NCBI RefSeq assembly: GCF_026571515.1
Contig: NW_026865121.1
Coordinates: 1-59,202 of the forward strand
Length of the DNA: 59,202 bases
Origin: Ruditapes philippinarum
Lineage: Eukaryota
Reading direction: 5' to 3'
Shown here: in pieces, positions 350 through 58,082 of the stretch
Layout: each line of letters begins with the position of its first letter
Position numbering within the stretch: position 1 is the first letter of the stretch
The notes under the pieces: generated by a model
Seen by the model: only the letters and a program-made list of their open reading frames with translations
The model's database searches: none
Told to the model about the DNA's origin: nothing
Translations under genes and position numbers: made by a program

Positions 350-401
350 CTGTCTGTAGAATAAGAAAACAACTAAATAAACAGAATCATACGAAAATCA
401 T
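350..401 (-). pseudogene. Leader-type exon with in-frame stop (MIFV*FCLFSCFLILQT-G|gt)
   Basis: Reverse complement reads tcaccATG ATT TTC GTA TGA TTC TGT TTA TTT AGT TGT TTT CTT ATT CTA CAG ACA G|gtatgg. Good Kozak context, 17 mostly hydrophobic codons and a phase-1 donor like the other leader exons, but TGA at codon 5. Confidence 0.4.
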
Positions 402-2793
402 GGTGAAAGTACCGCACACCTCTTTATTATAATAAAAGTAATAGGAAATAGGTTACTATTATTACTCGTAGTAACAAGTGTATAATATTAAGTGATTATC
501 AGGCCTGAAGAAAAAGTTAGAAATTATTTCTTATCTTCAATTATTCCATTTAAATCGTCATCTTTGAGTTTATTACATTATCAAAGACTCCCCTTCTTTG
601 AAAGATAGTTAAATAGATATTGCATGTATTTAAATTCAGTTGGCCCGTCAAAGTTTACTGCACTGGTGGGACAAATATTCATATTTAAATATCTTTTAAT
701 GGTTACGTTTTTCTTAAATATTGTTCTGAATTGAAATGAATATCGCCACGCATTTTCAATTGCACGAAAGCATGTTTGTGTTTGTTTTTGTTTTTTCCAC
801 TGATGTCAAATTCCTAAGTCGTACCAGTTGACTACTTCATGCGTGTCTTATCTCCAGTTATCTCAGCAGCATAGACAGGAGGAAGTCAATAGAGAATCAT
901 AGCTACGTACGGTAATGTGGAAACCAACACAAATAACAGACAGTAAACACGAAATTTAGTTTGCGCTTCATGTCCACCAAAATTTATAATATTGATAGAT
1001 AGATGAACTTTATTCATACAAAGGCAATATGCCCATCAGTCTACAGTAATAATACAATCAGCAGTTAAATAACATCAATGGCATGATATAGCATGGTATA
1101 CATAAAATAGGTCTATTAAAAAGTCAATTCTTATTCATCATAACAAATCTAGTGTATAATATATATGATTGTATAATATTTTATTCTAGACTATATAGTT
1201 TAATGGTGAAGTAAGCAATAAACAACAGCAGCTTTTCAAAATATTTTATCATAGACGTCATTGTTAACACCGACGTTGAAAACAATAATTTTAACTAATG
1301 AAGCTGAGGGTATATATTTATAACTTACAACTATTTTTATAGAATTTGTGAACGGTTAAATCTTGTTGTTTTTATTATACTCAATAGGGTTGTAGCATAT
1401 ATAAATATCTAAGTAATCTACAACACACGAATATAGTACGTGAACACAATAAACGTTCGGAAAAAATATTTTGTTATTTATTTTAAGGAGACTTTTCGCC
1501 GTTTAGCAATAATTTCGCACATGCGTCATTCACTCTTAATGCAATATATTACTAATATTTTTCTTTCATACAATTATTTTGAAAGAGTTCCTTTAAAAAA
1601 TATCCTAACAATAATATTGTAAACTAAAGGTAACTTTATTTACTGTAAACAACACACTATAAGCATTATATACTTATTTTACTACAATATTTGGTAAAAC
1701 TCAAGTAATCTTATCATTAAAATTTTATGAGAAAACATTCACTTTAAAGTAACAAGGCAATCAAAGAATGATGTGTTTTTCGGCAGACACAGAATTAGAT
1801 AATAGAATAATTGAAATGCACCGCTATCTTCCACGTCTGCATTACAGGCGAATCAATTATGTTTTTATTTACAGACAAAGACAAACTGATGCAAAATATT
1901 TCAGAAAATTACAGGTTTCCTCCAATAATATACTGATATACAGGATCCGCCTGTATCCGCGGAAAGCATGACATTCAAAATAGGTAGAAACAACGTTCAT
2001 AATGTATATAGTTTGTTCGTTAAATACGATTAACAACTTTTATATTTTGAATTAAAAATGTTTAACATACATTGTGTTAATGTTGCTGTTTTTTTTTGTT
2101 GCTTTATTTAAAGTAATTCGGTCTTTTATAGAAAATCTGGGATACCATAAATAATTATGTTAATAGTATTGCGTATAATACATGAAAACAAACCACGATA
2201 TGGATGATGTTAGAAGTGTTGGATACGTGATCTAATAAAACATATAGCAGATAATAAAGTGTTCTAGAACAAAATATTATTGTTTATCATATGTATAATG
2301 TTCTTACTTAATCAATTTAGAACATTGTTTTCCAGAAAGATAAGACATGAATTTTGTGAAGAAAACAATGTTTGGCATCCCTGCATTTAATATTGAAATA
2401 AACTACTTCTATTTACATGTTTTCTTTTCTCTCAACATTTCGCTATGTATTGTTTCTATTTGACAAACAATCCATTCAATAAAAAATCATTAACCAATTA
2501 CTAGCATAAAGGGACTCAACACAAGTTTTAAAATATTCGATTTGTTTGTGGAAAATAAATGAAGTTCTAAGACACATCAAAGAAACAAAATACAAAGTAG
2601 GGTCATTAATTTAGTGAAGATTAATGAAATTATTTCTTTCATTCGAATCCCCCTTAACATTCTGAATATACATACATACGAGAGTGAATATTCAAGCTCA
2701 TATCACTTTTTACCGCTTACATTTCAATGTTAAGCATTGTGAGTATTTCTTGAATATTTAAAAGAATCAGAAGAAATCTGTTGGCGTCAACGT

Positions 2794-2821
2794 AATCAAT
2801 CAATCAATCAATCAATCAATC
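2794..2821. repeat. (AATC)n microsatellite
   Basis: About 7 direct copies of aatc. Confidence 0.95.
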
Positions 2822-3162
2822 ACCTTTGTTTAGTTTTTCCCCATGTATTTGTATAAACGCAAGCTAAGGTTTTTATAATTATTTGTAAAACAAGAACCTT
2901 TTTGTCACTTCAAAAGCTCATGTTATTTTAAGAATGGCAAAGAAAGTTTATGTTACAATATTGATAGGATAATGACTGGTAACGTCAAAATGACTGTATA
3001 TCTTAATAACTAAGTTATTTAGTTCCGTTTTTTTCTCCATTACATCAAGTACAATGTACCTAATACTCTTGTTAAAGAGGTTTTGTAAGATGCAATTTCT
3101 ACGTCACAACTATAATAAGTAAATTGCATAAAACTTGGGAACCATTTTCGGTAAAAACCTTA

Positions 3163-55900: not shown

Positions 55901-57432
55901 TTGTGGTGTTTCTCATATAAGAAGAAATTTGTAACATGACGGTGTTTCTCGTATATGATGACATTTGTTACATGGTGGTGCTTCTCATATAAGAAGAAAT
56001 TTGTAACATGACGGTGTTTCTCGTATATGATGACATTTGTAACATGGTGGTGTTTCTCGTATATGATGACATTTGTTACATGGTTGTGTTTCTCATATAA
56101 GAAAAAATTGTAACCTGACGGTGTTTCTCGTATATGATGACATTTGTAACATTTTGGTGTTTCTCATATAAGAAGAAATTTGTAACATGACGGTGTTTCT
56201 CGTATATATGATGACATTTGTAACATGGTGGTGTTTCTCATATAAGAAGACATTTGTAACATGACGGTGTTTCTCGTATATGATGACATTTGTAACATGG
56301 TGGTGTTTCTCATATAAGAAGATATTTGTAACATGACGGTGTTTCTCGTAATGATGACATTTGTAACATTGTGGTGTTCTCATATATGAAAACATTTGTA
56401 ACATGACGGTGTTTCTCGTATATGATGACATTTGTAACATTGTGGTGTTTTTCCATATATGAAAACATTTGTAACATGACGGTGTTTCTCGTATATGATG
56501 ACATTTGTAACATGGTGGTGTTTCTCATATAAAAAGACATTTGTAACATGACGGTGTTTCTCGTTTATGAAGACATTTGTAACATGGTGGTGTTCTCATA
56601 TAAAAAGACATTTGTAACATGACGGTGTTTCTCGTATATGATGACATTTGTAACATGGTGGTGTTTCTCATATAAGAAGAAATTTGTAACATGACGGTGT
56701 TTCTCATAGAAGAAGACATTTGTAACATGACGGTGTTTCTCGTATATGATGACATTTGTAACATGGTGGTGTTTCTCATATAAAAAGACATTTGTAACAT
56801 GACGGTGTTTCTCGTTTATGATGACATTTGTAACATGGTGGTGTTTCTCATATAAAAAGACATTTGTAACATGACGGTGTTTCTCGTATATGATGACATT
56901 TGTAACATGGTGGTGTTTCTCATATAAGAAGAAATTTGTAACAACATGACATTGTAACGGTGTTTCTCGTATATATGACATTTGTAACATGATGGTTGTT
57001 CTCATATGTAACATGACGGTGTTTCTCGTATATGATGACATTTGTAACGTGGTGGTGTTTCTCATATAAGAAGAAATTTGTAACATGGTGGTGTTTCTCC
57101 TATTAGAAGACATTTGTAACATGACGGTGTTTCTCATATAAGAAGACATTTGTTACATGGTGGTGTTTCTCATACAAGAAGACATTTGTAACATGACGGT
57201 GTTTCTCGTATAAGATGACATTTTTAACGTGGGGGTGTTTCTCGTTTATGATGACATTAATTTTGTTACATGACGGTGTTTCTCATATAAGAAGAAATTT
57301 GTAACATGACGGTGTTTCTCGTATAAGATGACATTTGTAACATTGTGGTGTTTCTCATATAAGAAGAAATTTGTCACATGACGGTGTTTCTCATATAAGA
57401 AGACATTTGTAACATGACGGTACGTGTTTCTC
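52230..57432. repeat. 36-bp satellite array (~5.2 kb, roughly 140-145 monomers)
   Basis: Tandem gacatttgtaacatgacggtgtttctcatataagaa with variant blocks and a short interruption at ~54781-54808. Confidence 0.97.
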
Positions 57433-58015
57433 CTTAAAGCAATGATATTGTTAAAAATTTTCGATAATTTTTTAATTTTGATTATATATCATTTATACAA
57501 GAGCATTTATGTTAAGTTTTTTTTTTGTGATTTTAACATTATCTTTTTTTAAGTGTGTAAAAATGGTCGATTTACAAAAGCTTGCATAACAGCACCGTAT
57601 TTCACAACAAGACTTCTTTTTCGTTTCGGAGAGATGCTTAGTGAAGAAACCAGCATTTAAGATGATAACGATAACAATGAAAATTTTATAATGAAAATAC
57701 ATAACGAGTTTCTTGCTTGTTGATTAGCTTTATAGTCAGTAAGTACAAAAAGTGTACGGTTGTAGCCTATAATATTCATAAAACATATTTATTATAACGG
57801 ACATCAGTTGATAGATCCCTAATCTGACCTCTTATTTGAATAACAATAGATTTAACCACAAACATGGACATGTGCTCTTTTGTTAACAATTGGTTGAGGT
57901 GAAATTGTATCCACTACTTTGATAACTGGAATAAGACAGGTCAGGGATCTATGCATATACCATATACCGGTTTAACGAATTACTTAAATAAAAGTTATGA
58001 GATTTACACACTTAC

Positions 58016-58082
58016 CGTTAAAAACAGACGATAATAAATATAATCCAATCACTGAATAAACGGTATTCCCTAAATGATGCAT
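58016..58082 (-). CDS. Leader exon, family A (MHHLGNTVYSVIGLYLLSSVFN-G|gtaagt)
   Basis: 67-nt CDS with phase-1 consensus donor; MHHLGNT shared with the 18152 copy 40 kb away. Confidence 0.8.

What the first reader, a model, noticed from the sequence alone, without database searches (positions are those of the whole stretch)
350..58082. Array of orphan signal-peptide 'leader' exons: candidate variable first-exon / alternative-promoter system
Seen: at least 9 short minus-strand ATG-initiated exons (350, 5332, 10618, 18152, 21685, 24956, 28969, 32608, 58016). All are co-oriented and hydrophobic, and all end at a phase-1 position with a GT donor except the 21685 pseudo-exon, which has lost it. 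I recognised no repeated body exon between them. Established: phase-1 introns commonly follow signal-peptide exons, and clustered variable first exons spliced to constant exons occur in clustered protocadherins, UGT1A and chelicerate sDscam, where the variable part is a full domain. Inference: the variable unit here appears to be only promoter + signal peptide, so one secreted or membrane protein encoded left of the window could be expressed from many independently regulated promoters with interchangeable leaders.
Basis: partly seen in the sequence, partly recalled or inferred. Interest (0 to 1): 0.88.

Follow-up and report, generated by a model that had tools for sequence, protein, structure and literature searches.

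The report
Orphan signal-peptide first exons in clam
A 59-kb clam contig carries two small families of tiny promoter-plus-signal-peptide first exons that selection has kept intact, but their splice partners could not be found, so the proposed shared-constant-exon system is neither shown nor excluded.

Summary
Eight of the nine reported minus-strand mini-exons are real. Five are intact family-A leaders (18152, 24956, 28969, 32608, 58016), each 22 codons plus one base followed by a G|GTRMGT donor. One is a dead A copy (21685). Two are family-B leaders (5332, 10618), each 16 codons plus one base. The exon at 350 has in-frame stops and is not a leader.

Both families occur only on this contig in the 1.4-Gb assembly. 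Between old copies only the exon and about 70-120 nt upstream still align, and the exon shows a coding-type substitution pattern.

No body exon was found. None of 277 ORFs gave a credible Pfam hit, translated comparisons of the downstream regions scored like shuffled sequence, and the minisatellites are full of stops. Four RNA-seq runs gave no junctions and almost no cover, and protein databases hold no product with these leaders. The window is a whole contig, so nothing lies to its left in this assembly.

My best reading (0.45) is a lineage-specific tandem cluster of small secreted-peptide genes with short, fast-evolving downstream exons, silent in the sampled RNA. A hydra/protocadherin-like shared constant exon stays open (about 0.3). 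Interest is moderate. The scan noted similar leader arrays elsewhere in this genome (s1-804218, s1-793997).

The parts
58016..58082 (-). Family-A leader A58: ATG, 22 codons plus 1 base, donor G|GTAAGTG
   Evidence: Groups with A18 in the tree (support 0.99).
58083..58208 (-). Conserved promoter-proximal block of A58, with a TATA-like CTCTATAATT and an Inr-like TCAG
   Evidence: blastn against the A18 block: 207 nt, 63% identity, E 1e-13; alignment. Promoter function is inferred.
32608..32674 (-). Family-A leader A32, the most divergent intact copy
28969..29035 (-). Family-A leader A28, identical to A24
24956..25022 (-). Family-A leader A24
   Evidence: It lies inside the longest identical run (24890-25128) between the two 4-kb duplicates.
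25023..25766 (-). Upstream region of A24. It is about 3-fold less diverged between the young duplicates than the region downstream of the leader.
   Evidence: 7 differences in 24967-25766 against 42 in 23167-24766
21685..21747 (-). Dead family-A leader A21: ATG TAA, GT donor lost
18152..18218 (-). Family-A leader A18
18219..18338 (-). Conserved promoter-proximal block of A18: CTCTATGATT about 33 nt upstream of TTCAGC, about 24-nt 5' UTR
   Evidence: Promoter function is inferred.
10618..10666 (-). Family-B leader B10: 16 codons plus 1 base, donor G|GTGTGT
5332..5380 (-). Family-B leader B05: 16 codons plus 1 base, donor G|GTAAGTG
11787..11901 (-). Element of about 90 nt, conserved 1.2 kb upstream of B10. 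Its partner lies at 6555-6669, upstream of B05.
   Evidence: Role unknown; an enhancer or a 5' UTR exon are possibilities.
6555..6669 (-). Partner of the conserved upstream element, 1.2 kb upstream of B05
350..401 (-). Reported leader at 350: rejected, with in-frame stops after both ATGs
   Evidence: It lies in window 1-1300, which is 96-97% identical to C12714:3788-5110.

Best explanation
This is a locus-specific tandem cluster of two small, lineage-restricted families of secreted-peptide genes. Each leader is the ATG-bearing first exon of its own gene. For family A it is driven by its own core promoter, a TATA-like CTCTAYRATT about 30 nt upstream of an Inr-like TCAG, giving an exon of about 90 nt. 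The exon encodes the n- and h-regions of a signal peptide and ends in a phase-1 donor. It is spliced to one or a few short downstream exons inside the same 3.5-4 kb unit. Those exons evolve so fast, or are so short, that old paralogues no longer align. The array grew by unequal crossing-over: A18, A21, A24, A28 and A32 lie 3.3-4.0 kb apart, and A24/A28 is a duplicate with about 96% identity. One copy has died. The genes are silent or absent in the RNA sampled. Shown here: the exons, their paralogy, their uniqueness to this contig, a coding-type constraint on them, and the lack of any other conserved or recognisable exon. Inferred: promoter function, splicing, own downstream exons, secretion.
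For: Leader anatomy and phase were confirmed. Constraint: the flanks of old copies do not align, yet the exons are 59-79% identical with no indels. pN/pS is 0.28-0.94, and differences by codon position are 43/25/57 summed over six pairs. The longest identical run between the young duplicates spans the leader. The leaders are not an interspersed repeat. Regular spacing and nearest-neighbour similarity fit tandem duplication. The architecture matches known bivalve peptide genes. In MgCRP-I a short exon encodes the first 17 residues of the signal peptide, is followed by a phase-1 intron, and the mature peptide is hypervariable (PMC4558851). Myticalins have a conserved signal peptide, a hypervariable mature peptide, pseudogenes and presence/absence variation (PMC5577615). 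Unit size is typical of such compact genes.
Against: No second exon was found. None of 140 minus-strand ORFs of at least 40 aa gave a Pfam hit, and 137 further ORFs gave only junk hits. Translated Smith-Waterman scores of the downstream regions equal shuffled controls. There is no strand excess of Cys-rich ORFs. The best acceptor candidates give unrelated tails, and the A24/A28 candidate differs between the young duplicates. Known bivalve families keep a conserved pro-region or C-terminal extension, and none is seen here. Expression is not supported: there were no joints in four RNA runs, no RNA run held the 4-kb test stretch, and no protein with these leaders turned up in three word-index searches or in a profile search of 1.84 billion representatives.
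Confidence: 0.45

Rival explanations
1. Shared constant exons. The leaders are alternative first exons, each with its own promoter, all spliced to one phase-1 acceptor of a gene lying beyond base 1 of the contig. This would resemble Drosophila hydra (nine tandem exon 1s) or the Pcdh/UGT1A clusters, with only promoter and signal peptide variable.
For: Only promoter plus leader is conserved, both in old paralogues and in the young duplicates. Two leader families with no clear sequence similarity share strand and phase. No body exon lies anywhere in 59 kb. A possible relic half-leader lies only about 700 nt upstream of A24, which is too close for a whole gene. The fact that no RNA run held at least 5% of the words of 22000-26000 is expected if only a roughly 90-nt exon comes from that stretch. 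There is a precedent for tandemly duplicated short coding first exons (PMC1904467).
Against: No constant exon was seen. The contig ends at base 1. Window 1-5331 holds only unique AT-rich DNA and a young 594-bp repeat. The proxy left flank C12714:1-3787 shows no coding-looking ORF by eye (Pfam not run on it) and adjoins a rearrangement breakpoint. No junction reads or loose ends were reported at the donors. Phase 1 is the commonest phase after signal-peptide exons (established knowledge), so shared phase is weak evidence. Such arrays are far rarer than tandem gene families.
Confidence: 0.3
2. Decaying remnant. This would be a former tandem gene family, or partial 5' duplicates, that no longer makes any product. 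The leaders are conserved only by past selection or by gene conversion.
For: There is no expression signal and no database product. One dead copy and a possible relic are present. The contig is dominated by minisatellites, segmental duplications and young repeats. The contig is assembled once and branches from another contig at a breakpoint, as expected of an unstable or dispensable region.
Against: Five A and two B copies keep the ATG, an open frame, hydrophobicity, a Kozak-type context and a consensus donor, although neutral flanks are saturated. Second codon positions are the least changed. The young duplicates are least diverged at the promoter and leader.
Confidence: 0.12
3. Unspliced micro-ORFs. 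The 'donor' would be coding (Gly-Lys/Thr-Cys) and each unit would encode a hydrophobic micropeptide of 28-41 residues (72 in B10) without splicing.
For: Read-through frames stay open for 6-19 more codons. Cys after the junction is kept in all four distinct A copies, with a TGT/TGC difference.
Against: Conservation stops about 12 nt past the junction, and the tails and stop positions are unrelated. Families A and B, which show no clear similarity, both carry G|GTAAGTG exactly where similarity ends, which is what a splice donor predicts.
Confidence: 0.05
4. Spliced-leader RNA genes, or a transposon-borne repeat.
For: Short exons with a donor occur in a tandem array.
Against: A spliced leader would be abundant in every RNA library, but cover over the leaders is about 0-1.4x. 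There are no Rfam hits. The leaders are unique to one contig. The exon shows coding-type constraint.
Confidence: 0.01

Closest known systems
Mytilus MgCRP-I cysteine-rich peptide genes (PMC4558851)
   Same: A short exon encodes the first ~17 residues of the signal peptide and is followed by a phase-1 intron. The genes form a multigene, fast-evolving bivalve family whose signal peptide is conserved more than the mature peptide.
   Different: MgCRP-I also has a conserved ~100-nt pro-region exon and a six-Cys mature exon, and it is expressed. Here there is no second conserved exon, no Cys array and no RNA.
Mytilus myticalins (PMC5577615)
   Same: Conserved signal peptide, hypervariable short linear mature peptide that similarity searches would miss, pseudogenes, presence/absence variation between individuals, and tissue-restricted expression.
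   Different: In myticalins the signal and mature peptide share one exon and a conserved anionic C-terminal extension exists. Here the leader is a separate exon and nothing else is conserved.
Drosophila hydra, nine tandem alternative exon 1s (PMC1904467)
   Same: Tandem duplicates of a very short coding exon 1 plus its upstream region, made by unequal crossing-over in a repeat-rich region, with some copies probably dead.
   Different: In hydra the shared exons 2-4 are known and 5' RACE shows use of several exon 1s. Here no shared exon or junction is known, the copies are much older, and they encode signal peptides.
Schistosoma japonicum gene family sharing core promoter and signal sequence (PMC3434034)
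   Same: Paralogues share only the core promoter and the signal sequence. The family is species-restricted and flanked by repeats.
   Different: The schistosome copies are dispersed genome-wide and expressed. Here they are confined to one contig in tandem, and no expression was seen.
Clustered protocadherins / UGT1A / chelicerate sDscam (from general knowledge)
   Same: A co-oriented array of first exons, each with its own promoter and a donor, including relic exons.
   Different: In those systems the variable exon encodes whole domains and constant exons are demonstrated. Here the variable part would be only a signal peptide, and the constant part is hypothetical.

Membership tests
Variable-first-exon cluster (Pcdh/UGT1A/hydra type) | Tandem, co-oriented paralogous first exons, each with its own upstream promoter-like conserved block | tested here: met
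   Promoter activity itself is inferred.
Variable-first-exon cluster (Pcdh/UGT1A/hydra type) | One shared set of downstream constant exons with a common acceptor | not testable with these tools
   The contig ends at base 1.
Variable-first-exon cluster (Pcdh/UGT1A/hydra type) | RNA junctions from several first exons to the same acceptor | tested here: inconclusive
   No joints and no loose ends were reported at the donors of A28/A24 and A32 in four RNA runs, and cover was about 0-1.4x.
Bivalve hypervariable secreted-peptide families (MgCRP-I / myticalin type) | Short exon encoding most of the signal peptide, followed by a phase-1 intron | tested here: met
   compare PMC4558851
Bivalve hypervariable secreted-peptide families (MgCRP-I / myticalin type) | A second conserved region (pro-region or C-terminal extension) and/or a conserved Cys framework | tested here: not met
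   nothing above the shuffled level. Very short exons could have escaped detection.
Bivalve hypervariable secreted-peptide families (MgCRP-I / myticalin type) | Tandem multigene locus with pseudogenes | tested here: met
Bivalve hypervariable secreted-peptide families (MgCRP-I / myticalin type) | Expressed precursor of about 50-120 aa | tested here: not met
   Absence in the sampled data is not proof of silence.
Spliced-leader RNA genes | Leader present at the 5' end of many mRNAs; a known SL RNA model | tested here: not met
Interspersed repeat / transposon fragment | Many dispersed copies in the genome | tested here: not met
   copies occur only on this contig

The most novel reading that the evidence does not exclude
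The eight leaders are alternative promoter-plus-signal-peptide first exons of a single secreted or membrane-protein gene lying beyond the contig end. This would be an old, selectively maintained hydra-like array in which only regulation and the cleaved leader vary.
Probability: 0.3. Interest if true: 0.65.

Novelty: new member of a known kind. Interest (0 to 1): 0.35.

Why it matters
If each leader heads its own gene, this is one more taxon-restricted, fast-evolving secreted-peptide locus of the kind that underlies bivalve immune and mucosal diversity and presence/absence variation. That would be useful for annotation but not surprising. If the leaders share constant exons, it would be an animal locus where selection has maintained many promoters with interchangeable signal peptides for one protein. 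That would be a clean natural case of regulatory diversification by first-exon duplication. Either way, standard annotation and domain searches miss these exons entirely.

Tried and rejected
1. The exon at 350 as a leader: rejected because of in-frame stops.
2. Minisatellites as repetitive coding bodies. The 36-bp array (52352-57421) has at least 20 stops in every frame and the 33-bp array (14434-16318) at least 8, so both were rejected.
3. The 127-128-aa ORFs recurring in the 3.9-kb units. The A and B unit types differ by indels that are not multiples of three and change frame, so these are not coding.
4. GC-rich spots as hidden exons: they are high-copy repeats.
5. The candidate 45-aa four-Cys ORF at 22765-22899 has no relatives beyond its own duplicate.
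6. The two-read skip 27264->27462 has non-canonical ends at direct repeats and is not an intron.
7. The conserved 135-bp block 20044-20179 / 32192-32308 has stops in all frames.
8. X1-X5 listed as 'RNA?': their word share scales with run size, as for low-pass DNA (my inference).
A shorter pattern was used instead.
10. A chimeric alignment meant to widen the length range of the protein word search split the leader into pieces and was abandoned unsent.
Exon candidates were searched separately, by reference only.
13. A peptide-string search of the literature gave 0 papers.
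Full report
CONTEXT. The window is an entire contig (G000:C13608, 59,202 bases, no N) of a 1.4-Gb assembly. Earlier notes of this scan call the genome Manila clam. I did not verify the species. GC content is 26-33% throughout.

OBSERVATION. 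Reading the nine coordinates and a rule-based scan confirm eight minus-strand mini-exons, which fall into two families.
- Family A intact copies (ATG, 22 codons, one extra G, then GTAAGT or GTACGT): 18152-18218, 24956-25022, 28969-29035, 32608-32674 and 58016-58082.
- Family A dead copy: 21685-21747 reads ATG TAA and has lost the donor.
- Family B (ATG, 16 codons, one G, then GTAAGT or GTGTGT): 5332-5380 and 10618-10666.
- All intact copies have a purine at -3 of the ATG and a hydrophobic core (mean Kyte-Doolittle 1.7-2.2 over 11 residues).
- The exon at 350 fails. Both candidate ATGs meet a stop within five codons.
- A24 and A28 are identical because they sit in a 4-kb tandem duplication, 22567-26601 / 26587-30627, at about 96% identity.

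NOT CHANCE, NOT A REPEAT. Leader blocks match each other with E = 8e-22 to 3e-5. A 16-base A-family pattern hits exactly these six places in the whole genome, against five hits for the reversed control. The B pattern hits only its two copies exactly. A 181-nt A24 query finds only copies on this contig.

WHAT IS CONSERVED.
- Between old paralogues (A18, A24, A32, A58) only the exon and about 70-120 nt upstream align. Everything else is at the level of noise by blastn with word size 7, tblastx and translated Smith-Waterman against shuffled and reversed controls.
- Within the exon there are no indels. pN/pS is 0.28-0.94, and differences by codon position sum to 43/25/57 over six non-independent pairs, with the fewest at second positions. 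That is what selection for a hydrophobic peptide predicts.
- Between the young duplicates the longest identical run (24890-25128) spans the leader. The 800 nt upstream carry 7 differences, against 42 in 1,600 nt downstream.
- Four of five A copies share CTCTAYRATT about 30 nt upstream of an Inr-like TCAG, some 23 nt before the ATG. I read this as a core promoter and an exon of about 90 nt. This is inference.
- The B copies share an element of about 90 nt, 1.2 kb upstream.
- The tree pairs A18 with A58 (support 0.99) and loosely groups A24/A28 with A32.

SEARCH FOR BODY EXONS.
- None of 140 minus-strand ORFs of at least 40 aa in 1-37.3 kb hit Pfam. A further 137 ORFs from both strands, including minisatellite ORFs, gave only weak junk hits.
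- ORF counts are equal on the two strands (224 against 217). Cys-rich ORFs show no strand excess (11 against 14).
- The minisatellites downstream of A58 (36 bp x 140, 52352-57421) and A18 (33 bp x 57, 14434-16318) carry at least 20 and at least 8 stops in every frame.
- The recurring 127-aa ORF of the 3.9-kb units changes frame between unit types.
- GC-rich spots are high-copy repeats.
- The best phase-1 acceptors give unrelated tails, and the A24 candidate differs from its A28 twin.

EXPRESSION.
- No indexed RNA run holds 5% or more of the words of 22000-26000. The DNA holders come from three studies, so the locus itself is real.
- I laid four raw RNA-seq runs from four studies on 26800-32750. 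This stretch holds leaders A32 and A28, and A24 by identity, with their downstream regions.
- The result was no joints and no start or end pile-ups. 99-100% of laid reads matched only partly, and the reads piled up at three short spots (27896-27941 lies in the ~110-nt interspersed repeat; 30248-30279 and 31463-31505 look like repeats too). Cover over the leaders was about 0-1.4x.
- One polyA run had about 120 nt of partial cover around 28953-29032. That is too little to interpret.
- A two-read skip is not an intron.
- A leader profile searched against 1.84 billion protein representatives returned only two spurious repeat proteins. Its sensitivity to a 22-residue match is borderline.
- Word-index searches with the A18 ORF, the B10 ORF and the best B05 exon-2 ORF found no candidates in their length ranges.
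- Rfam and tRNA scans found nothing.

LEFT FLANK.
- Nothing lies left of base 1 on this contig. Window 1-1300 is 96-97% identical to C12714:3788-5110.
- To the right of that point C12714 continues as a copy of the 5' part of a prenyltransferase beta-subunit gene, whose full copy is on C13547. The breakpoint lies inside an exon.
- C12714:1-3787, the only proxy for the missing flank, shows no coding-looking ORF by eye; Pfam was not run on it.
- Window 1301-5300 is unique apart from a young 594-bp repeat.

INTERPRETATION. The leaders are real, old, selectively maintained first exons that encode signal-peptide-like N-termini. What they join is unknown.

I favour separate small genes (0.45). Tandem arrays of compact secreted-peptide genes with a short signal exon, a phase-1 intron, hypervariable mature parts, pseudogenes and individual presence/absence are well documented in bivalves (PMC4558851; PMC5577615). 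The 3.3-4.0 kb spacing also suits whole genes. The weakness is that those families keep a second conserved region, and none is found here.

The shared-constant-exon model (0.3) explains that gap, the shared strand and phase of two leader families with no clear similarity, and the lack of RNA holders. It has a precedent in hydra (PMC1904467). However, its key element is unobserved and its prior probability is low.

A dead remnant (0.12) and unspliced micropeptides (0.05) remain possible. A spliced-leader RNA or a transposon origin is contradicted by the data.

VERDICT. Interest is moderate (0.35), and both live readings fall within known kinds of system.

Noticed in passing
window 52352-57421; also 40767-41144, 44333-45079, 48659-49036: A 36-bp minisatellite with about 140 copies in the main array (81% matches). 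The main array starts about 600 nt downstream of leader A58 and its plus strand is strongly G-rich. Two of the three minus-strand registers are stop-poor, but every frame has at least 20 stops.
   Followed up: yes
window 14434-16318: A 33-bp minisatellite (57 copies, no indels) 1.8 kb downstream of leader A18. Its unit shares CATGT...TGTCTT with the 36-bp unit, so the two arrays behind the two MHHLGNT-type leaders may share an origin.
   Followed up: partly
window 37227-45080 / 45082-52976: A 7.9-kb tandem duplication at 97.5% identity. Each copy consists of two ~3.9-kb subunits that are about 78-86% alike. The sequence is unique to this contig apart from an inserted repeat.
   Followed up: partly
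window 41200-41528 and 49093-49421: A very young ~330-bp high-copy element, 98-100% identical to copies on many contigs and tandemly arranged on C14520. It is present only in the B-type subunits.
   Followed up: partly
window 3159-3752: A young ~594-bp high-copy element. The 40 scored copies are 95-98% identical, out of more than 3,000 first-look candidates. It has internal ~75-bp repeats and is the GC-richest part of the left end.
   Followed up: partly
window 23834-23945, 27861-27961, 20823-20948 (one orientation); 3754-3866, 36768-36851 (the other): A ~110-bp interspersed element with more than 1,200 genomic candidates. Many RNA reads match its core (27896-27941) and then run on into unrelated sequence, so it sits in many transcripts.
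   Followed up: partly
C12714:5110 (locus L007) against C13547:139136 (locus L032): A junction inside an exon of a prenyltransferase beta-subunit gene copy. On one side C12714 matches C13547 at 91-97%; on the other it matches window 1-1300. This is either a real rearrangement or partial duplication, or a chimeric contig.
   Followed up: partly
window ~25676-25720 and its duplicate ~29688-29732: A possible relic of the 3' half of an A leader (about 30 of 42 identical to A18, donor lost) only ~700 nt upstream of A24/A28. The match is weak (E about 0.007-0.06).
   Followed up: partly
window 20044-20179 and 32192-32308: A ~135-bp block 96-97% identical between the A21 and A32 units, far more alike than their leaders, with stops in all frames. 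It may be recent gene conversion or a small mobile element.
   Followed up: partly
window 7764-7931: A nearly perfect 24-bp x 7 tandem repeat (99% matches).
   Followed up: no
window 8598-8801: A ~200-bp GC-richer inverted repeat seen in the self-comparison.
   Followed up: no
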